From Klebsormidium nitens (taxonomy: Eukaryota > Plantae > Klebsormidiophyceae): a DNA stretch of 64,000 bases. Both the position numbers and the translations under genes were made by a program. A model generated the notes under the pieces. The model did not search any database. It was not told the origin of the DNA and saw only the letters and a list, made by a program, of their open reading frames with translations. Where the stretch lies: contig DF237102.1 of the NCBI GenBank assembly GCA_000708835.1, positions 62,001 to 126,000 on the forward strand, given 5' to 3'. Positions within the stretch are counted from its first letter, which is position 1. Each line of letters opens with the position of its first letter. Below are positions 1 to 12,122 of the stretch, piece after piece.

Positions 1-1099
1 GATATTAGTTTTGACAGGGTGCTGTTGCCAGTTTGTAACATTTAATTGCTTCAGGTTGTCAGTATGCTTCCTTCATGAGCTGAAACAACAGCATTCCTGT
101 AACACCTGTTATAGTCACGCAGTGCTGTATTTCTTTGCACCATTGTTCAAGGGCCAGCAAATCCTGTGTCACACCATAAAAATGATCGTTGCCTTGCTGG
201 AACGCTATGCCTCCCCATGAAGTGCTGACCCAAAGATTTCAGTTTCAGGATGTGATTGATCCAATAACAAAGAGTTCCTTGGGGGGAAGAAGTCTTGACT
301 GGTCTTTTGGAGGCCAGCTCAATCTGGGAGCTAGCGGTCAGAAGGGCCTGGACCCATAAACCCTGCCAATCTGCCAAGATGAACAGAGTCTGTGTCCTTT
401 GGCCGCACAAGAGCGTGCCTTGCACTGGGGATGCTTCCTGGCGCTTAGTTGGTGCGTCTCACAGGTCTTTTAATCGGTGAATCAGGAGCTCCCTTATGAA
501 TAAACAGTGGGCAGAATCTGGGGGGGTTCAGAAAGCTGCTTTCAGAGACGACTCGTGCGCAGTCAACGAGACAATGAGGACTTTTTTCCCTTTAATTCTG
601 TAGCATTTCTTGCCTCCTACAGCTGTTGAGGAGTTCCAAGCATTCACAATAATCTGCAGAGCTTCTTTTTCCCTTCTTGGTCGAGTTTTGAAGGTGTCGC
701 AAGCAGTACCGCAAAATGCATGCAGGAGTAATCAGGGCCATGTCACATCTCAATGGTCTACAAAGAGTGTACGAGCAGCTTCCTCCCTTTGAATAGACTG
801 CTCTTACTACTAGTCTCATGCAAATCACCTGGATTCATGCTTGTCCAGTAGGGTTTGAACCAGACCCCCGAGCTCAACCTGAGATCAGTCTCAAGCTTTT
901 GGCCTTCCTCGATACATCCAGCAGAACCCGACTGATTCACCACTTTGGGCACCATGTTTTCAAAAATGCTGGCTCTGTAAAAGATCACGAACCGCAGTAA
1001 TTCCAATCTGCCCTTTCTCTACGCGTTGGCTGGCTTTGAAAGGCATGACCCCTCAACTGTATCACAAAACTTCTTTTGCAGGCAGCCATTCCGGCGACC

Positions 1100-1825
1100 A
1101 TGGCGACCCAGCTCCAGTTTGCCCAGGTCGCCACGCACAAGCTCGTTCTCGGGTTCCACCAACAGGGCGCGGGCGATCGGTGCGCGATCGCCAGGTTTGA
1201 CAACCGGTACTCTCTGGTGCAGTCCTTCACGGGTTCCGAGGAGAGAGTCCACGCGTCGCTGGCAACCCTAGACGCCAACGGCGGCACGCGCTTCCGCGAC
1301 TCGATCTGCGACTTCGTGGACTACTTCCGGACGTCCGGGCGGCGCGACCGCCCGTGGCTCATCATCGTCATCACGGACGGGGACGACAACGGGAGCACGC
1401 GGTCCGTTTTCAACGCCGGGCAGTACCTCTTGTCCCGCTTCAACCACGAGCAGAATAATTTTATGTTTACCATCGGGGTCGGTGATGACGTGGATAACCG
1501 GGCGCTTGAGGCGCTGGCAAAGCAGGGCGGGTACAACCACGTCGGGCTCGAGTCGTTCGAGCTGTTGGAGGCGCTGTTCCAAATCATCGCGGCGCAGGTG
1601 GTGCAGTCAATCACGGGGGTGGTGGGGCAAATTGACGGGAAGACGTTCAGTCTGGTTGGAGCAGAGGAGACGCTAGTCCGGCAGGGCATCGACTACGGCT
1701 TCCTCATTGACTGCTCTGGTTCGATGGGTTCGATCGTGGGTCGCTCTAGACAGTCAGTGCGGCCACAGCCGCTGCTGATGGCCCCGCCGCCAGCTCAGCA
1801 GCCAGCCTGCTGTTCAATCCTGTAG
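1100..1825 (+). CDS. Intronless von Willebrand factor A (vWA) domain protein with permuted motif order and a C-terminal CaaX motif
   Basis: ATG at 1100 within ORF 1076..1825. vWA elements are present: DRCAIARFD (beta2), GGTRFRDSI (MIDAS Thr), LIIVITDGDDN (MIDAS Asp) and MFTIGVG. The DxSxS strand YGFLIDCSGSM is near the C-terminus, and the protein ends ACCSIL*. A strong acceptor (ttcttttgcag, 1081) lies just upstream, so a 5' exon (UTR or coding) exists. Confidence 0.85.
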   Translation: MATQLQFAQVATHKLVLGFHQQGAGDRCAIARFDNRYSLVQSFTGSEERVHASLATLDANGGTRFRDSICDFVDYFRTSGRRDRPWLIIVITDGDDNGSTRSVFNAGQYLLSRFNHEQNNFMFTIGVGDDVDNRALEALAKQGGYNHVGLESFELLEALFQIIAAQVVQSITGVVGQIDGKTFSLVGAEETLVRQGIDYGFLIDCSGSMGSIVGRSRQSVRPQPLLMAPPPAQQPACCSIL

Positions 1826-3537
1826 TAAGAGCCTCGTGAAGAGCAAAGCCTTTGTGACGCTTAAGTCTGCAGTGCTGCAATATAAGGAGATATCGACATA
1901 AATTCTGGTCAGTCTTTTGAGTTGGGAGGCAGCGTCCACGCAAACATGTATATGTAACTTGTTTAGAATCAAGCCAGGTTGATCGGCCTGTGGTCTACAT
2001 TGGAAAGTCTACAGGGGCGATTGCTTGCATCCTAAATTTAGGCTTCTAAGGACCTAGGACGGGTGCGGCCGACTTCGGTTGCTTCCATTGCTGAACGGGC
2101 ACTGTTCGAGAGTGATTTCGGACGCGTGCTTTCATTGTATACTGTCTGAATCAACCTGATAATATCCACAATCTTTGAATCCATTCCCAGAATATGCGCT
2201 CTACCATACGATGGGAAAGAACAGGCAGCGCGGCGGCTTTAGTAAATGATGCACATGTTCTCACCAGTCCGAGCTGAGTCCTATACTCGAACAGTGTTCG
2301 TCGAGTGACGACGGTCTAGATACGACTGGGAAGCACACCACTTATCCAAGCTTCAGCTTATAATATTGCTCAATCAAGTGAGGAGGATGACGCATCCGAC
2401 GCCGTGTGCATCCTTTGGCTTGATGCGGTTGTTGATGAGCTCAGGGCATACATTTGGTCACAAGGGACTACGTTCTCGACGCGCTCAGCCGAATAGTGTT
2501 ACATGTACAGAAGGTGGAGCTGCGCAGTGCTTCGAGGGTATACAACGCAAGTAAACGGTTGGAAATCACCTCGAAGGGTCACTTCGTGCGTGTCTCAAGA
2601 TCGTTCGAACACCGTTGTTGCAACTGATGCAGCTTGGACGGTTGCCAGACTGCAGGCTCAACTAAAATACAATTCGCGGTGAAGCTGTGCCAGTACGTAA
2701 TGGAGCGCTGCGGCCCACCTCTTCACGGCTCATGGCGATCGTTGATGCGTGAATCGTCACCAACATTGAACGAACTCCGTCATTCAAATTATTGTAGTTG
2801 CGGTAGTTCGCAGCCTACCGTGGTATGTTAGAAACTTTGGTAGAACATTTGAGTCGTCAACTTTGGCATGGTCGCAACAACCATGATCCTATCTTGGCAA
2901 TGCACATGTAGGAATCGGAGCATAGATTGATGGCGCGCTCATATATCGGATCGAGCTCCAATGCACGGCAGATCGAACGCATCAGCGCATGTATTTGACC
3001 AATGATCAGCTTGCTAGATCTTCTCGGCCGCGGCCTTCGTCTGAAATCATGTGCAGGACTACCCATGTTTTACAAGCGTGGCGCAGCGTCGTCCTCGATC
3101 TTTTGAAGAGACGATGGTGAATAAAACCGACTTAGAACCTTGGCAAATTTAGCCTAAACTGTCGATAATGAGACTATTCAAAGAAAATAGTCTTTAACAT
3201 GCATGATAAACAATATGGGCAGGCTAAGTGCACTGTAGATCTTCGTCCTCTGGATTTCAACAAAAAGTTGACACTGCGACTTCCACGTTCGGCCGAGTCT
3301 TAGCTGCAGAAAGTCGGACTCGCTTATATGATGCGCGGGCTAAGTTGGACTCAGGGTGGGGCCCTCTGTTCTGCACGAAACGTTACCCAGTTCTAAGTTT
3401 TCTCGTCCGCTTGCTGACCCCTTCGAGTATGTACGGATAGGCCTGGAACTTTCACAAACAAACTGCTACGCTCAGATTGAGGTATAATGATTGAATCAAA
3501 CCCGCTACGCTTATATAGCTGTCATCTCACTATGTAC

Positions 3538-5995
3538 TCATTGCTGTTGAAGAGCGCGGGCTCTCCTTCCTGCGTCGTTTGCTTCTTTGGAAGTCCGCCT
3601 TGTGCACTCAAGGATGGTCTTCTCAGACACAACAAAGTATGCACCCACCATGCCTACAACAAGCAAGACAAATGCTTCGCACTCATTTCGGCCTTTATAA
3701 GAATCTCTGATCGTCAATCTTCCATTCGGTTTGGACCAGCTTTTCAAACTTTCTCTCAAGCAGTCGAGCATACAATGATGAGGGAAAGTCACCACAAGCG
3801 CAATCCTCCGACGGTATTTGAACTGCCGCACCATCGCAAATCGTGCTTCAAAATTATTCCACACAGAGAATATTGCCAGCGAACGCCTCTGGGAGCCAGG
3901 CCTTCAAATCGAGAAAGAAAACCAACATCGAAATGCACTAAGCAAGCGGAGCCAAGGACGCAACGCGAATAGTATCCTGCACTTTTCGTCAAACCTGTCT
4001 GGGCTGAAGAGTCGGAATCTGGCGCGAGTCACGAGAACTCCGAAGTTTTTGATGCACGGATCTGGTCGGTGAGAATTGGAGACTTCAATATGGTACACAC
4101 TACTACTTGGGGTTTGACCCGGCCAAATTAGTACCCAACATCGATTTGGAAATTGTGTCACACCCAATCTTCCGAATGCCGACCGACAGGTTCAGAGAAG
4201 TCCACCACCTCTTCAACGAGAGTGGAGGATATTGTGGAAGGGCCCCTTGTGACTGAGTTTTCTTGCTCACTTCCGAAGCAGCTCTGCAATCGAGTGGATT
4301 GAAGCCAACATAGCCAACACAACAAGATCGAAAAACGCTTTGATGATTCGCTGACACATTTGGCTCCCTCTGGCTCCCTCTACTGGTGAAAGAACATTGC
4401 CCAGACTCAATGAGTATGTATCATAGGCCAGAGAAGGGTTGATGCGCTGCGCACCATCATGAGAAGGTTTCGGAGCGCTGATCCACTCGAACGGTTAGAT
4501 TAGCTCCAAGTACTTTGAACATGATCGTTGTATCAAAAGGTGCGTAACTATCGCTGTTTCGAGCAAGAACACCAAGTATTGAACAAGCTCCTGAGAAACG
4601 CATGCTGAGGCTGGGAAGCAGTCACACTCCCGTACACACCATTGTTCCCATCATATCTTGACAAACACGAATTGGAGAAAGTCGGACGATTGGCCCTGCC
4701 TTTATTGAGCTTCTGTAACCGTGACATACAACCTCTTCCGAACATATTTCAAACACCGAGGTTGAGGTTATCATATCGCTGTGTCAGAGCCAGCATGGAC
4801 ACCATACTTGGCCATCGAAGTCCAAGCATTATGATGCTTCGACAGTTTGGTACTCAGATGGAAGTTTCCGTTCAGGCATTCTTCCCTTTGTTTCAGGAGT
4901 TTGTCCCGGCGATTAAACATTCAATTGATTGCTAGCGGAAGAGCAGTCTCAAGATTTGTTACAGAATGACCTTAGTCTAGCCCCATCATCCAGAGAGTAA
5001 ACAAAGCTGCTGAAGCTAAGCTGAGAAGCTCAGCAACTCAATGGTATCTTACCTGCACAGGGGATAAGAGCTCTGCCGGTGTAGTTGAAGTTATGTGCGA
5101 ACCAGGGGGAGAAGCGGACCGCTGCCAACGTGCCTGCTAGGGCCAAGCCCCCCCAAAGTGCTGCAGCTTCCAGACCCTTGTAGACGCCAGCTGCAGCAGT
5201 CGACAAGAAGGTTGGAACGAGAGAGTTGTCTGCAGATTCTTTTGCAGGAAGTAGTAAGGGATTGTGTCAAATAGAATGCTGCTGGATCCTGTCCAGTAGC
5301 AATGTCTTGCTGATCCAGAGGAAGACGTGGCTGAGAGACCAGATGAGGGGTCTTGTGGTATACTCGGGCGTTAGCCCCCTTTTTCAGGGATTTGACGACC
5401 AACATTTCCATAGGGAAACTGATGTGCATTCCTTTTCTGATACAAATAACGCACAATTGAGAGTGAGACGAGACAATCCGTCTCAAATTACTGTAGACGA
5501 CCCCACACGGGTGGATTGCCTTGCATGAATCTGGCAATTGACTCTCGATAAGCATGAACCTGGCGGCAACGCAATGCTGCCGGTGGCTGCATTTGCAATC
5601 TGATAGCAGGCACTCTAGACAGCCCCTTCAAGACATGAGTACTAGGGTACAGGACAGCCAACCTTCTGTTGAAGTAATTGCAGCCCCAGCGACCAATTTC
5701 TGCATGCATCTCATGCAAGCCACCTTTGCAGACGTCTTCTGAACATATACTTTGAGGCAGACAACAACAAGCACGCGAATAATCTGAATAATTGCATTCA
5801 GAAACACTCTGGCTGGGCTGGACCCTCACCATCTGTACACTGCTTCACCCTCTGCTTCTTCTCCTCCGCCTCGGACAATCCATTCCTCTCCACAACCTGA
5901 GGAATGAACTGCCCCGATCGCTGCAAAGTTGCTGCATGCGTGCCAGCAGACCGCGCTGCCTCTTGGCGTTCTAAGAATTCCGACCAAAGCCCCAT
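3538..5995 (-). CDS. ENOD93: Early nodulin-93 (ENOD93)-like small membrane protein, 3 exons, ~139 aa
   Basis: Exons 5995-5830, 5190-5053 and 3653-3538 join in phase with GT-AG ends. Product: ...EEKKQRVKQCTDAGVYKGLEAAALWGGLALAGTLAAVRFSPWFAHNFNYTGRALIPCAGMVGAYFVVSEKTILECTRRT.... This matches the recalled ENOD93 pattern (EGxxAGxKAA; TLAxVRxxPWAxxNLNxTxxALI; AYFIVADKTIL). The start codon is less certain. Confidence 0.85.
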
Positions 5996-6595: not shown

Positions 6596-9500
6596 ATGCG
6601 GTCCAATCTGCTGAAGCGGGTGGTGGCGCTGCAACCAAGCCCCAAAATGCTGCAAAGCACTCTCAAAAGTTTTCAAAACGATTGCATTCATGTAATTCCC
6701 CCAGCCGATGCAGTACCCTCCTTGTCCTATGCTCAACCTCTTCTCGCTGGCTGTACTGAAAAATTACATTCCGTTTCCTGTAAGAGCTTCCCTGTTGATC
6801 TGCAACAACACAAGCCAGCTCATAGGGCACAATGCGCAGGTGCAGGTCCTCTTACAACTTTTCAAGCTTGTGTCACTGAGCGGACAGCTTTTGCCCAGAG
6901 CAATGTGGGGCCCGGAAGCTGGCAGAGAAATCATAAGCAGTGGTTAAATGTATCACCACGAAGATTGAATCACTTCTGTCGAAGCTTCACTCGTTTTCCA
7001 GCAGCTACAAAACGTGGGAGCTTATTGGAGGCTCTTGAGGCAGAGAGCAATCTTTCTGACCAGTTCAAAATTCTGACAGTTGCTAGGGGAGGTGAAGCAT
7101 GGTCAGATCCATCTGAAGATAGTGGAGCACAAACACTGCGAGCTGGCAGCTGGAAGGCATTGACCCTTGGCGCCTGGGAGGAGCATTTGTTGTACTATCG
7201 CTCTTTCTATGATCTTTTTGTCCAGCATGCTGCTCGAGCCTCAGAGTCTTTGTGGGGGCGTGGAGAAGGGCCCTTCTCGGATCTAGAGGTGAGATAGATT
7301 GGTCACTTTAAGCTTAGATGGAGAAGACGATATCGCTGCAAAGCAGCTCTGACGGGATCCAGTTGCGATGAAGAGAGGACTGCCAAAGCTAAGCCCAGCT
7401 TGACCTTGCAGATTGAGCAAACCTTAGAGCATTCAAGCATAGGGCTTAGCTGCTCTGAAGGAGCCCAATGAAAGCACCTGAGATTTGTGTAACAAGTGCC
7501 TCTCATGCCAATACTTTTGGAGAACTTCTTGAATCGACGAGTTAGAGTAGTAGGCAATCTATCCACGTGTCTCTGCGCGTTTCATCAGATATGAGGTTAC
7601 ACTCAACCAGCTTTCGGTAGCACTGGTTGCTGGTCTGAGGATCCTAATTGTCAACCATACAAGTAGATGTTATCCAGTCTTTATCAACAGAAACGCACTG
7701 TCACCAACTCAATTGGCAGCTGATGTCACCCTGCGAATCAACAGTCATGATCTCCTCCTCTCCTCTGCAGGGAGGTCTTTCCTGGTTGTCTCCTGACCTT
7801 GGCACCCGTGCCCAGACGCTTCGTCAGAGCCGCGGCGGGACAAAACTCTTTGGATTCATGATGTGCTTTCCGGACTCTCCGGACTCATTTAAAGCAGTGT
7901 CAGATCTGATGCTGTCCGTGTTTCTGGTGGACGACTGGATCGAGCAGCAAGGCCCCGACGAAGCGGAGCAACTGGCTGAATGGTGGAGGACGATAGCTAT
8001 CCAGAGGTGCGACTCATTCCGGACTGAGCCCAAGCCTCTTTATGGTCTTCAGAATCCCTTGTCGATTGTAGCACCTTTCGAACTTTGCGACATAAGTTTT
8101 CAAGATCTGACTTCGATCTGACGTTCCTCAAAAGTCGCTTCCGGTTCCTCTCTTTCGTTTCCTCCTTTGGATCAATATCATACGCGCTCAGTGCTTTGTC
8201 TCAAGGTAGATTCGCCCGTTCGGTTCTGAAGTTCTGAGAATCGAGATGAGAAATATCACGTACATTCCGAAGCGGGAGACCTTTGTAGAAATGTGGCTGA
8301 AAAGTCGTTCTAAGATGGCGCTCACGGCTAGGGAGTCGCCAAGAATGTCGGCTTACAATCTCCAGCACCAGAGCTGTAGGAAACAAATGAAGGTTAAGCG
8401 AGGCGATCCTGACATTCACTGCCTCCGCAAAAGGCGTCACTCGACGATCGTGCGGAGCGCCTTCTCGAAGAGCTTTATCTCCGAAAAGGCTGGCCCCTTC
8501 CGCAAGTGAAAAAGTATCCACAAACTTCACAAAATGCTTCTCGACTTCGACCTGCAGTGTAACGTCCGCGTTTTTGCTTGCAACAAAGTTTACGATGCCA
8601 TGCATACTGCGAACGGGCTTTTCGCCTCTGCACGAATCTTTCCATCGGCCAAATTTCGATGGCGGAAAACATATGCAGACTCACTTCTTCACCGAAAGCA
8701 CTAAACACCTTTCCCTTCCGCTATTCTCAAACCGCTTCTTGCAAAAGTTGCCACGCAAACCCTCGAAGGCAGAGCTTTCCATCCGATTTGTCCGCTGGCC
8801 TGCCCTCAAAGGGCTCTAACTTACTCGCGCTCAGTAAAGATCCCTCTGGTCTTCAACCAGCTTACGATCAGAATAACGACTCCCTGGGTTCCCAAGACTG
8901 GCAGCCTTCAATCGTCTTTCACAAAGCGCGCCTCCCAGTGACACGTGGCAGCTCTTCATTTGCAGCGACGCCGGCGTGGCTTTTGACGCCCAGCGGGCGT
9001 TCGAAGCTCTGCCTCCGTCTCTACTTGCTGACGCCAGCATGCGAAAAGCGGGCGAGCTGTGCTGCTCTGCGCTGACGTACTTTCTCGCGCGTGCTGCGCG
9101 AGTGGACCCCGCATGGTTCGGGCGGTTTGCATGGGCCATTCACGAGTACGCTAAGGTGAGACGTCTCGCTCCCTTCCCGTTCTTCCGTCCCTTTCCCTCT
9201 GCCTCCGTCCTTCCTTTTTCTCTCGCTGTTATTGTTCCTTTCCAAAGTTAACGTTCTTCGTTGCGTCAATCCCTAATGTTCGCTTTTCTGACAATTGCTC
9301 GTTGCTTTACTTTCGATGGTGCTCTTGAAGTCTTTGTCTCCAATATCCACACTCGAGTGTCGGTGTCCACTTAGCCACAGAGCCGTGGTGATTGGCGGGA
9401 ATGTAGACGGCCTCACTCCGAGGCATACCTAGTCCAGTTCCACAAATGAACCACGGTATTCTGCCAGAGCGCTTGCACCATGCCTGTTGATGTTCTTTTC

Positions 9501-12122
9501 TGCTGCCTCAGAATCTCGTAGTGTCTCTAAGCGTGATTCGTAGGCAGTCCCTGGGAGCAGGAATCGACAAGGAAATCTTTGAACCGACCATCCACGCACT
9601 CCGCACACCTGCCCACCCTAAGTCTTCTGCCGAATCCCATCCGTTCCACGAGCCATAACCCAATGCTAGCTAGCTTTATTATGCTACCTAAGCCTAACCC
9701 AAACCTTAACCGACCCAAACCAAATCTAAACCTATTTGCCTCAGGCCGTCGCTTCCGAGATCACGGCGGCGCGCTCTTTCCTGGAGACGGGAACCCACCC
9801 CGCCGTCGTGGAGTACTTCGCCTACCGCTGCTTCAGCAGTGCCTTCATCCAGCTGGCAGTCCTGGCGGCCCTGCAGCAAGGCCTCCGGTGAGCACATGAC
9901 GTCACCTTTCCACCTTTCCTCATATCCGCTGACGTCCTTGCATCGTTCGCGTCCTAAGCGCAACGACTTTCTCTCCGCTGGCACTCTTTTACGGTCCTGT
10001 ACTAGGCCTCCGGAGAGCGCATCGTGACGTCACTCTGCTGCCGATTTCCAACGTGAAAGTGGCGCTGACGTCAGGTGGTACAGAGCACTGCCGGCGCCTG
10101 GCCGCAGCCCTCCCGGCAAGGCCTTTCTGTGGCCACCCGTCAATCAGTCCGCCAAAAGCGAATGCTGGCGTCAGGCTGACATCGTCCGGCTGAAGTATGG
10201 AGGCTTTTCAAGCTTTCCGGTTCTCTTTACAATCTTGGAGACTTCGTTATAGGAGCTTACCGGATGCTTTTTAAAATCGAGGCGGCTTGTCGGGCCCCTG
10301 TGACTTGCGCAGTTGTGCCACATGTTGACACGAGCTTGACTACCAGTGTTTCGCCCACACCCCAACCTGCGATTTTCGATAACGCGTGAATGAAGCCTTT
10401 CTATCATATTTCTGGGATTCTCGTGTAATCTTCGGCAAGCCCTCACGCTCTGATGGCGTCTCTTCGTCACTTTCCCTTTTGCGAATGGACGTCACTCTGC
10501 CGAATACACCTTTGAGCTTGGAGTTCGAGTTCCGGAACGTAGAAACTTTGGTGACAATCTAGTCCCATTCTGCCCAAACATCTGTAATGACTTAAACTGT
10601 TGAGCAGGTTGAGCGACGCGCTTGGCCGCTGGTGTGCGCGCGCACCTACTCGCGCGCTGCTGCAAAACTGCATGACAAAACGTTCCGAACTAAGCCGCAG
10701 GTTTCGGAGGGAGCTAGCTATAACTTTCATTCGCCATCACAGTGGATCCCACTCCTGGGGTCTCTCGCGCTTCATTGAACAACGAACTCACAGCTTGATT
10801 GGGTCGAGGTATGCGCGCGCAGGTTGAGCGACGCGCGCTTTGCCGGGGCGCGGCCGCTGCTGGTGTGCGCGAGCCTGCTCGCGTGCTGCTTCAACGACGC
10901 GTTCGTGGCGGCCAAGGACGCGGCCGCGGGGCAGACCAATCTCACGAAAGCCGTGGGGACGAGGTGCGCCGTCGACATGCATAACGCGCTGGTTGACTGC
11001 CTCTGCGAGGAGTCCGAACGTTGGTTGGAAGACGCTACGGAGGTGAGATGCCTTTTTACAGTGACCTCTATTCCTCAGCATCAAATCAAACCTCTTCACC
11101 TAGTTAAGGCTTTTACCTTGAGTTTGAAGGGAAGTGTGAAACTCAAGTGGCAGAGGCTGCGGCCACGATAGGAACATGTTTTGTCTATGTACAATCTGTA
11201 GCCCTCGATGCCACGTCATCCATGGACTCTCTCCGCACAAACCGCGTAACGACAACTCAATGTGAGGAACTAGTACTTAGATTCTTAGGCAGTTAACTTT
11301 GCAGGAGCTGCGGTTTGGGATCGTCGCACGTTGGCTGCATATTTCCTTGCAAAATAGCCGCAGCTCTGCTTCAGGAGTTCCGGAAGAGCAGAACCATGTG
11401 GCATGCATGTGCCTTTTTGGGCTCGCTTTTTCGGCTCCCTTCTCTAGCGATCAAGGAGGGGCGTCTGGGAACCTGTTTTGCACGGACCAGAACTGTAACG
11501 CTCAGCACGAAACGTGTCTCCATTCGTCCTTCAACAAAAGTGGTCAAATCCTGATTCTAGGGCGGGAGATCAAGCCCCCGCGCGTGTGACGAGAAACAAG
11601 TGTCTGAATCCGCCAGTAGCGTAGTTTGTACGTGACAAGCACGGGTTCAATGTTCTACGGAGGCGCTGAAAGTTCCCTTGTTCCTGTGAACAGTCTTACA
11701 CAAACTTCACCGGTTGTATAGCTCCGAGTATTGGGACAGCGTCCTGTAGAGTTCCGGGGTCAGAATCCGAGATCCTGTGCCGACCGTGACAATCCGTCTC
11801 AGTCACTTCAAGAGCTCCCGACTTGATTGCCAAACGCGTAAATATCTCTTCGACGCAGGGCGACGACTCGCAGCGCTTCGTCGACTTATTGAAGGCGAGC
11901 ACTTTCGGGTGCAACCTGTGGCACAACATCTGCCCTCGGTACCGCAAGTATTTGGAGGTGACGTGTCAACCGTTCGGCGTTATTGACGGCCCTAACGGTC
12001 TGCTGAGCGCTGGGAATGGAGCACTCAAGCAAGAAATGCGGGAGCTTGTGCACACACTGGCATCTAGTGAATCCAGTGCTCCCAGATTTTCAAATGCATG
12101 TGAGGGGATACACTTGACATAA
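6596..12122 (+). CDS. Microbial-type class I terpene synthase-like protein (MTPSL-like), 6 exons, ~581 aa, long N-terminal extension
   Basis: Exons 6596-7288, 7771-8006, 8966-9155, 9745-9887, 10823-11042 and 11859-12122 are phase-consistent (1746 nt). Motifs occur in the expected order: FPDSPDSFKAVSDLMLSVFLVDDWIE (DDxxD/E), VEYFAYRCFSS (pyrophosphate-sensor Arg), NDAFVAAKD (NSE/DTE-like), QTNL...AVDMHNAL, and GCNLWHNICPRY (WxxxxxRY). The 5' start is uncertain, and the last exon might be spliced at 11957 instead of reading on to 12122. Confidence 0.8.
9595..9732 (+). repeat. Degenerate copy of the C-rich dispersed repeat, in terpene synthase-like intron 3
   Basis: ccgcacacctgcccaccctaag...cccatccgttcc followed by cctaacccaaaccttaac. 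It resembles the core at 51960-52010. Confidence 0.5.

What the first reader, a model, noticed from the sequence alone, without database searches (positions are those of the whole stretch)
1100..1825. Apparently circularly permuted vWA domain: the MIDAS DxSxS strand is at the C-terminus
Seen: the ORF begins with a helix (QFAQVATHKLVLGF), then beta2 (DRCAIARFD), the MIDAS Thr loop (GGTRFRDSI), the MIDAS Asp strand (IIVITDGDD) and FTIGVG. Only after a ~30-aa linker does GIDYGFLIDCSGSMG appear. Known: in canonical vWA domains the hydrophobic strand ending in DxSxS is beta1, the first element. Inference: the domain was cut just after DxSxS and rejoined, so a complete metal site could still form. 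I know of no described vWA family with this order. Tandem duplication followed by truncation is a plausible origin.
Basis: partly seen in the sequence, partly recalled or inferred. Interest (0 to 1): 0.85.

Follow-up and report, generated by a model that had tools for sequence, protein, structure and literature searches.

The report
Circularly permuted vWA domain family
This expressed Klebsormidium nitens gene encodes a metal-binding von Willebrand A (vWA) domain whose normally first strand, carrying the DxSxS metal motif, sits at the end of the chain; dozens of bacterial and eukaryotic relatives share this rearranged order, and I found no description of it in the literature.

Summary

- **The ORF.** Window 1100-1825 (+) is Klebsormidium nitens KFL_001530100. 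It matches the vWA profile only from position 26 on. The hydrophobic strand plus DCSGS lies 110 residues after the TDG strand.
- **Not a gene-model artefact.** RNA contigs from four studies cover 1079 to about 2170 with no splice after the motif. The upstream exons carry no DxSxS.
- **A conserved family.** About 70 homologue clusters have the same order. They come from Chloroflexota, chytrid and glomeromycete fungi, Diphylleia, Paratrimastix and protists. Of 56 non-redundant members, 35 stop 4-5 residues after DxSxS. All five MIDAS residues are conserved.
- **Sequence test.** Moving the 16-residue C-terminal segment to the front restores a full-length match to a canonical vWA profile: +17.8 bits in 40 of 40 sequences, against +1.1 bits for a shuffled segment.
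- **Structure.** AlphaFold2 models (pLDDT 87 and 94) give a six-stranded vWA fold with a confident C-terminal strand. VIA-align Z is 16-17.6, and model residue 1 aligns just after DxSxS of CD11b. I could not inspect coordinates, so the strand's neighbours are inferred.
- **Lipid anchor.** The tail ends in CSIL, a validated plant geranylgeranylation box.
- **Novelty.** Four literature searches found no description of a permuted vWA domain. I rate it a new variant of a known kind.

Another first-stage note in this scan (s1-290992) flagged this same stretch.

The parts
1082..2170 (+). Last exon of KFL_001530100. The acceptor is at 1081. The exon holds 18 nt of leader (or in-frame extension), the CDS and about 345 nt of 3' UTR.
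   Evidence: RNA contigs from 4 studies cover 1079 to 2155-2182 with no internal joint. The loose end before 1079 reads as the annotated exon 2.
1100..1825 (+). Coding sequence of the 241-aa permuted vWA protein, from the conserved Met to the stop at 1823-1825.
   Evidence: The closest homologue, P0002 (54% identical), starts at the equivalent Met and ends CCTIL.
1109..1156 (+). Helix alpha1 (residues 4-19). It is the first element of the chain and corresponds to the helix that follows DxSxS in canonical vWA domains.
   Evidence: DSSP of the model. Model residue 1 aligns to CD11b residue 146 and vWF-A3 residue 940.
1286..1288 (+). MIDAS threonine, T63 (GGTRF loop).
   Evidence: Invariant in alignment A1.
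1355..1378 (+). Strand beta4 (LIIVITD), ending in the MIDAS aspartate D93.
   Evidence: Strand 86-92. D93 is conserved in at least 90% of sequences.
1556..1615 (+). Helix alpha7 (residues 153-172), the last element of a canonical vWA domain.
   Evidence: The Pfam VWA match ends at residue 159, at profile position 171 of 174.
1616..1690 (+). Linker of about 25 residues that returns the chain to the start of the central strand. It is a low-confidence hairpin here and a helix in the bacterial model.
   Evidence: pLDDT is 52-63. The bacterial model has helix 196-205 at pLDDT 81-88.
1691..1723 (+). Relocated strand beta1 (IDYGFLI) plus the MIDAS motif D204-C-S206-G-S208.
   Evidence: Strand 198-204 has pLDDT 87-97. 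S206, S208 and M209 are invariant and D204 is conserved in at least 90%. Un-permutation test.
1727..1810 (+). Disordered Pro/Gln-rich tail (residues 210-237) with a second Cys at 237.
   Evidence: pLDDT is 42-71. Most homologues lack this tail.
1811..1822 (+). CaaL box, C-S-I-L (residues 238-241), a predicted geranylgeranylation site.
   Evidence: Translation. P0002 has CTIL. CSIL is geranylgeranylated by PGGT-I in plant ROPs (bioRxiv 10.1101/2023.09.04.554920).

Best explanation
The gene encodes a true, naturally occurring circular permutant of the vWA (integrin I-domain-like) fold. The chain starts at helix alpha1 and runs through beta2-beta3, the Thr loop, beta4 (TDG), beta5, beta6 and alpha7. 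A linker of about 25 residues then leads to the central strand beta1 and its DxSxS loop, which come last. The two halves of the metal-ion-dependent adhesion site (MIDAS) therefore come from opposite ends of the chain but assemble into one normal site. The cut lies in the beta1-alpha1 loop, 4-5 residues after DxSxS, so both chain termini sit on the MIDAS face instead of the opposite pole. The module is an autonomous domain of a family found in Chloroflexota and in scattered eukaryotes. In Klebsormidium it is a cytosolic protein with a disordered tail of about 30 residues ending in CSIL. I infer that it is geranylgeranylated and tethered to a membrane with the metal site facing the bilayer, where it recruits an acidic-residue ligand of a partner protein. 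Shown here: the element order, its conservation, expression of the gene, and the fold prediction. Inferred: pairing of the last strand with beta2 and beta4, metal binding, lipidation, and the adaptor role.
For: - Order of elements and truncated Pfam match. The VWA profile always starts at position 11-26.
- mRNA structure: one contig per run covers 1079 to about 2170 in 4 studies, with no joint after the motif. The upstream exon is spliced at 1081 and carries no DxSxS.
- Family: 92 hits at E<=1e-10. About 70 clusters have alpha1 first and the strand plus DxSxS last. Of 56 non-redundant members, 35 end 4-5 residues after DxSxS.
- Bacterial members are stand-alone ORFs of 216-226 aa in MAGs and one complete Ktedonobacterales chromosome.
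- MIDAS residues are conserved across both ends of the chain.
- Un-permutation restores a match from HMM position 2: +17.8 bits in 40 of 40, against +1.1 bits for a shuffled control.
- The family profile wraps around the inter-domain junction of the tandem-vWA protein PTMP1: profile 199-212 aligns to its second DxSxS, then profile 11-164 follows.
- AlphaFold2: pLDDT 86.9 / pTM 0.84 for the alga and 93.8 / 0.91 for the bacterial protein P0014. Each has exactly six strands. The last strand has pLDDT 87-97 although its linker is weak. Each model shows single-residue beta-bridges at residue 2-3 and just after DxSxSM, which suggests (their partners cannot be read) that the two termini are adjacent.
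- Foldseek and VIA-align: only vWA domains match, Z 16-17.6, rmsd 2.2-2.5 A. Target ranges begin right after their DxSxS.
- CSIL is a validated PGGT-I substrate motif. Lipid-anchor-like ends recur in eukaryotic members: 7 or more MG-start N-termini and Cys-rich C-termini.
Against: - An intermolecular (swapped) insertion cannot be excluded from monomer predictions.
- The linker is poorly predicted in the algal protein.
- The annotated gene model adds 104 N-terminal residues. Whether these are translated is unknown, although they carry no strand or DxSxS.
- Metal binding, prenylation and any ligand are untested.
- The literature library lacks most subscription journals, so an earlier description could exist.
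Confidence: 0.85

Rival explanations
1. Strand exchange between molecules. The C-terminal strand with DxSxS does not close its own domain but inserts into the vacant central slot of a neighbouring subunit. That would give head-to-tail dimers or filaments, in the manner of donor-strand complementation.
For: The linker of about 25 residues is longer than the short alpha7-to-beta1 distance needs, and it has low confidence in the algal model (pLDDT 52-63). Many family members are fused to oligomerising or scaffold modules such as TPR and TRAF zinc fingers.
Against: Both monomer models close intramolecularly with high confidence, and pTM is 0.91 for the bacterial protein. The linker is conserved and is helical in bacterial members.
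Confidence: 0.09
2. Gene-model or assembly artefact. The ORF would be the middle of a tandem multi-vWA gene, with the first strand of this domain on a missed upstream exon and the C-terminal DxSxS being the start of a second domain continued on a downstream exon.
For: An acceptor at 1081 is really used, so there are upstream exons. Tandem vWA proteins contain the same local order across their junctions.
Against: RNA contigs from 4 studies run through the stop codon and 3' UTR without any joint. No other vWA-like exon exists in 64 kb. The upstream exon sequence has no DxSxS. The C-terminal CSIL/CTIL is conserved in P0002. Bacterial homologues are complete single ORFs.
Confidence: 0.02
3. A decaying or non-functional vWA remnant. 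The N-terminally truncated domain would no longer fold or bind metal, and the C-terminal motif would be a coincidental leftover.
For: The algal protein has a long disordered tail and an uncertain N-terminal extension.
Against: The gene is expressed in four studies. All five MIDAS residues and many core positions are invariant or nearly so across bacteria and eukaryotes at about 34% identity. Both models are confident.
Confidence: 0.03

Closest known systems
Canonical vWA / integrin I domains (Pfam PF00092, PF13519), e.g. CD11b I domain, vWF A3, ITIH, BatB
   Same: They share the alpha/beta fold: VIA-align Z 16-17.6, rmsd 2.2-2.5 A over about 160 residues. They share the five MIDAS residues DxSxS, T and D, and there is significant sequence homology.
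   Different: The order of elements differs. Here beta1 and DxSxS come last instead of first. The termini lie on the MIDAS face rather than the opposite pole, and alpha7 is tied to beta1 by a linker.
Tandem vWA proteins such as mussel PTMP1 (PDB 4cn8), collagen VI and matrilin-like repeats
   Same: Across the junction of two tandem domains the local order (alpha1 to alpha7, then beta1 with DxSxS) is the same as in this family. The family profile wraps around that junction.
   Different: Those proteins have complete domains on both sides. Here there is only one domain's worth of elements, and the chain usually stops 4-5 residues after DxSxS.
Copines / plant BONZAI (BON1): intracellular, membrane-associated vWA proteins
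   Same: Both are cytosolic vWA domains brought to membranes (from general knowledge of the family; BON1 is mentioned in PMC12167975). Lipid-anchor-like termini recur in the eukaryotic members here.
   Different: Copines use two C2 domains and have a canonical-order vWA. No sequence relationship closer than the general vWA level was seen.
cpRAS (circularly permuted Ras-like GTPase, Elias and Novotny 2008, PMC2430557)
   Same: It is a precedent for a circularly permuted nucleotide- or metal-binding alpha/beta domain with a scattered distribution among eukaryotes. It is fused to vWA domains.
   Different: In cpRAS the GTPase is permuted, not the vWA. It is not homologous to this protein.
Type-I ROP GTPases with a C-terminal CSIL box
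   Same: They carry the identical CaaL motif, CSIL, which PGGT-I geranylgeranylates.
   Different: The protein fold is unrelated. Only the lipidation signal is shared, and here it is only predicted.

Membership tests
vWA superfamily (PF00092 / PF13519) | Significant sequence match to the vWA profile | tested here: met
   PF00092 E 2.2e-8, 34.9 bits (cut-off 23.8). PF13519 29.4 bits (cut-off 27). 39 of 41 family members hit VWA_2.
vWA superfamily (PF00092 / PF13519) | Six-stranded Rossmann-like alpha/beta fold | tested here: met
   AlphaFold2 models with six strands. All top PDB matches are vWA domains, Z 16-17.6.
vWA superfamily (PF00092 / PF13519) | Complete MIDAS: DxSxS, a Thr in the alpha2-alpha3 loop and an Asp after beta4 | tested here: met
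   D204, S206, S208, T63 and D93 are present and invariant or at least 90% conserved. Metal binding itself was not tested.
vWA superfamily (PF00092 / PF13519) | Canonical element order, with beta1 and DxSxS as the first element | tested here: not met
   The profile match starts at position 26 of 174. DxSxS lies 111 residues after TDG. The full-length match is restored only after moving the C-terminal segment to the front.
Circular permutant of a known domain | The same set of elements, with N- and C-terminal parts exchanged, in a single chain, and conserved in homologues | tested here: met
Circular permutant of a known domain | The relocated element occupies its original place in the 3D structure | tested here: inconclusive
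   The strand is confident (pLDDT 87-97), the fold has six strands, and the canonical spacing of the remaining strands is kept. Coordinates and contacts could not be read.
CaaX/CaaL prenylated proteins (PGGT-I substrates) | Cys at position -4, small or aliphatic residues at -3 and -2, and Leu at the C-terminus of a cytosolic protein | tested here: met
   The protein ends in C-S-I-L with the stop at 1823, and the stop is present in mature mRNA. CSIL is a proven PGGT-I motif. The homologue P0002 ends CTIL.
CaaX/CaaL prenylated proteins (PGGT-I substrates) | Actual lipid modification and membrane association | not testable with these tools
   This needs an in vitro prenylation assay and localisation of wild type against a C238S mutant.

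The most novel reading that the evidence does not exclude
The permutation is functional, not neutral. Placing both chain ends at the MIDAS face and tying alpha7 to beta1 would create a new kind of intracellular MIDAS switch. In most members the chain ends 4-5 residues after DxSxS with an acidic residue at +3, so the free C-terminal tail could act as a built-in pseudo-ligand that caps the metal until a partner displaces it. In the lipid-anchored members the metal site would be held against the membrane. The family is fused to Ser/Thr kinases with TPR in Chloroflexota, and to TRAF zinc fingers, ZZ or TLDc domains in eukaryotes. It would then be an undescribed signalling or immunity adaptor shared by multicellular bacteria and eukaryotes.
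Probability: 0.2. Interest if true: 0.8.

Novelty: new variant of a known kind. Interest (0 to 1): 0.62.

Why it matters
vWA/MIDAS domains are among the most studied adhesion and assembly modules, found in integrins, von Willebrand factor, complement, the proteasome subunit Rpn10, TFIIH and MoxR partners. Their allostery depends on the N- and C-termini lying together opposite the metal site, and on the alpha7 helix being free to slide.

A natural family cut inside the MIDAS loop tests how much of that wiring the fold needs. It also gives protein engineers a validated new set of termini next to the metal site.

Profile searches truncate these proteins or annotate them loosely (some are named 'Mg-chelatase subunit ChlD'). 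The family's fusions to kinases, TRAF fingers, TLDc domains and lipid anchors point to an uncharacterised intracellular signalling role in Chloroflexota, early-diverging fungi, protists and a streptophyte alga.

Tried and rejected
- **Paralogous exons.** tblastn of the ORF against the whole 64-kb window, looking for exons of a tandem vWA gene, found nothing convincing.
- **C-terminal fragment alone.** Pfam scans of the 52-aa and 27-aa C-terminal fragments gave no hit because they are too short. The un-permutation HMM test replaced them.
- **Specific family models.** NCBIfam gave only weak sub-threshold hits to TIGR03436, and PADLOC gave none.
- **Genome scan.** It was redone with a bacterial sub-alignment.
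- **Literature.** Four searches for a permuted vWA or MIDAS domain found only the permuted Ras paper and unrelated uses of the words.
- **Recent transfer from Chloroflexota to the alga.** A quick, unfinished tree does not support it. The known bacterial sequences form a clade with 100% SH-aLRT support. Klebsormidium plus P0002 fall outside that bacterial clade, on the side of the tree that holds all but one of the labelled eukaryote sequences; that grouping has only 79% support.
- **Neighbours of the last strand.** Reading them off the model was not possible because no coordinates are exposed.

Full report
**What is at the site.** The window is eukaryotic-looking DNA with sparse ORFs. The ORF at 1076..1825 (+) stands out. 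Its ATG at 1100 sits in an accATGg context, 18 nt after a polypyrimidine tract and a cag acceptor at 1081. Pfam VWA matches residues 14-159 to profile positions 26-171 of 174 (E 2e-8). VWA_2 matches from profile position 29. So the domain lacks its first strand and DxSxS at the N-terminus. A hydrophobic strand followed by D-C-S-G-S-M lies at residues 198-209. The protein is identical to residues 105-345 of Klebsormidium nitens KFL_001530100 (GAQ83568.1), annotated only as a hypothetical VWFA protein.

**Is it a gene-model artefact?** No.
- tblastn of the ORF against the 64-kb window finds no further vWA-like exon.
- The annotated model adds 104 residues from the leading 18 nt of this exon (1082-1099) and two exons 1.2-2.6 kb upstream, outside the window. 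They contain no DxSxS and are not conserved.
- Contigs of runs from four studies were laid on window 1-4000. Their total contig sizes are transcriptome-like, and the tool's label 'RNA' is a guess. In each run one contig covers 1079 to 2155-2182 without any internal joint.
- The loose end before 1079 reads as the end of annotated exon 2 (...HAYSRS). So the 1081 acceptor is used, and the stop at 1823-1825 and a 3' UTR of about 345 nt are in the mature mRNA. Nothing is spliced on after DCSGSMG.
- Depth falls to near zero in the flanking intron and intergenic DNA, as expected for RNA.

**Is the order conserved?** Yes, widely.
- An exhaustive phmmer search of 1.84 billion representatives gave 655 hits at E<=1e-3 and 92 at E<=1e-10.
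- Reading the sequences and scoring them with a family HMM shows about 70 clusters. In each, the module begins with helix alpha1 (consensus KIDyAv.AA..F) and ends with phi-D-phi-x-phi-phi-phi-D-x-S-G-S-M.
- Of 56 non-redundant members, 35 stop exactly 4-5 residues after DxSxS.
- The module is an autonomous domain. It occurs alone at 216-245 aa. It occurs at the extreme C-terminus after Ser/Thr kinase plus TPR, TPR alone, seven TRAF zinc fingers, Sina-like fingers or ALK/LTK glycine-rich regions. It also occurs N-terminal to ZZ fingers, a TLDc domain or a GNAT domain.
- In every case Pfam's VWA match starts at profile position 11-20.

**Who has it.**
- Named eukaryote members are K. nitens, the chytrids Rhizophlyctis, Cladochytrium and Zopfochytrium, the glomeromycetes Diversispora and Rhizophagus, Diphylleia rotans, Paratrimastix pyriformis and an MMETSP protist.
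- Bacterial members are Chloroflexota: Anaerolineae, Ktedonobacterales (including the complete chromosome CP126532.1), Roseiflexaceae and Chloroflexia.
- The bacterial genes are ordinary single ORFs in compact gene arrays next to ABC transporters, CHAT-like proteases, Zincin_1 proteins and kinases. This excludes missing exons for the family as a whole.
- A quick, unfinished maximum-likelihood tree puts the known bacterial sequences in one clade with 100% SH-aLRT support. K. nitens plus P0002 (99% support) fall outside that clade, on the side of the tree that holds all but one of the labelled eukaryote sequences; that grouping has only 79% support. I take this only as no sign of a recent transfer from Chloroflexota.

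**Is the C-terminal segment really beta1 with the MIDAS loop?**
- In a 41-sequence alignment with 34% mean column identity, T63, S206, S208 and M209 are invariant. D93 and D204 are conserved in at least 90% (repeated). All five MIDAS ligands are therefore under selection although they sit at opposite ends of the chain.
- I built an HMM from 80 canonical-order vWA domains found among the hits. Native modules match it from HMM position 17 (mean 70.3 bits).
- Moving the 16-residue C-terminal segment to the front makes all 40 sequences match from position 2, with a mean gain of 17.8 bits (range 8.7-24.2). The same segment shuffled gains 1.1 bits. The junction is seamless, so the cut lies in the beta1-alpha1 loop.
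- A profile search of PDB sequences shows the same relation from the other side. In the tandem-vWA protein PTMP1, profile positions 199-212 align to the DxSxS strand of the second domain, and profile positions 11-164 follow immediately.
- No PDB sequence matches the profile in its own order.

**Structure.**
- AlphaFold2 on the alignment gives pLDDT 86.9 and pTM 0.84 for the algal protein. It gives 93.8 and 0.91 for the bacterial protein P0014.
- Apart from a low-confidence hairpin in the algal linker, each model has six strands: beta2, beta3, beta4, beta5, beta6 and the C-terminal strand. The C-terminal strand has pLDDT 87-97 even where the preceding linker is weak. That can only reflect confident packing against the core.
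- Both models show an isolated beta-bridge residue at position 2-3 and another just after DxSxSM, which suggests, though the bridge partners cannot be read, that the two chain ends are adjacent as expected for a cut loop.
- Foldseek returns only vWA domains.
- VIA-align gives Z 16-17.6 at rmsd 2.2-2.5 A over about 160 residues. Model residue 1 aligns to CD11b residue 146. From my knowledge of that domain, this is just after D140-x-S142-x-S144. It aligns to vWF-A3 residue 940. The targets' own beta1 thus has no counterpart in model residues 1-177, while the other strands keep their canonical spacing.
- Coordinates are not exposed. Placement of strand 198-204 between beta2 and beta4 is therefore a strong inference, not a reading.

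**Mechanism proposed.** The domain should bind Mg2+/Mn2+ at a normal MIDAS and use it to hold an acidic side chain of a partner, as vWA domains do (established knowledge of the family). What is changed is the wiring.
- Both termini now emerge beside the metal site.
- Helix alpha7, whose sliding drives the open/closed switch in integrin I domains, is tethered to beta1 by a conserved linker.
- Fused domains and lipid anchors therefore hang from the ligand-binding face.
- The algal protein has a disordered tail of about 30 residues ending in CCSIL, and its nearest relative ends CCTIL. CSIL is geranylgeranylated by plant PGGT-I in ROP GTPases (bioRxiv 10.1101/2023.09.04.554920).
- Other eukaryotic members carry Cys-rich C-termini or MG-start N-termini that resemble myristoylation signals.
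- I therefore propose a cytosolic, lipid-anchored MIDAS adaptor. Lipidation, metal binding and the partner are all inferred.

**Rivals.**
- Intermolecular strand exchange remains possible at about 9%, because only monomers were modelled and the linker is long.
- The missing-exon artefact and the decaying-remnant reading are contradicted by the RNA contigs, by conservation and by the bacterial ORFs.

**Novelty.** Four full-text searches were run: circularly permuted + vWA; circular permutation + von Willebrand factor; six phrase variants; and circular permutation + MIDAS. They found no description of a permuted vWA domain. The nearest item is cpRAS, where a Ras domain fused to a vWA is permuted. 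NCBIfam and PADLOC have no specific model, and one metagenomic member is named 'Mg-chelatase subunit ChlD'. The library lacks most subscription journals, so I rate this a new variant of a known kind rather than claim absolute priority. Another first-stage note in this scan flagged the same stretch as a permuted vWA with a prenylation signal. That is the same DNA, not independent support.

Noticed in passing
window 1-1081, and L008 10001-12621: The mRNA has a long 5' part: 416 to 966 nt of contig lie upstream of the 1081 junction. The annotated in-frame N-terminal extension of 104 aa is low-complexity and absent from all homologues. The closest relative (L001) has a cag acceptor about 20 nt before its ATG, but in a different phase. 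This suggests a 5'-UTR intron and a true start at 1100.
   Followed up: partly
window 3115-3655 and beyond (- strand): An expressed exon has a splice boundary at 3655, with loose ends in all four runs. It falls in the gene annotated with an ENOD93 domain (L008 15081-17538, which corresponds to window 3538-5995).
   Followed up: no
window about 6708-11825 (L008 18251-23368): The neighbouring gene carries a microbial-type terpene synthase domain (PF19086). Another first-stage note (s1-361068) also flagged it.
   Followed up: no
L015 5-1693; L016 3043-8620: In a Roseiflexaceae MAG, two permuted-vWA genes lie side by side (TPR plus module, then module alone), followed by a 778-aa protein whose C-terminus looks kinase-like by eye (not scanned against Pfam). 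In Anaerolineae CFX8, a TIR-like ORF (FISYRRDD motif) precedes a kinase-TPR-permuted-vWA gene and a 695-aa ORF whose C-terminus looks kinase-like by eye (not scanned). This looks like a signalling or conflict-system neighbourhood.
   Followed up: partly
family alignment A1/A3; window 1724-1735: Position +3 after DxSxS is Glu or Asp in 27 of 56 permuted members, against 10 of about 79 canonical domains. 35 of 56 chains end at +4 or +5. The free acidic tail next to the metal site could act as a built-in pseudo-ligand. The algal protein lacks this feature (it has GSIV).
   Followed up: partly
models md8895e537d54 and madbea22f29ec: The linker between alpha7 and the relocated strand is a weak hairpin in the algal model and a confident extra helix (residues 196-205) with a conserved Trp in the bacterial model. 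The linker itself seems to be a conserved structural element.
   Followed up: no
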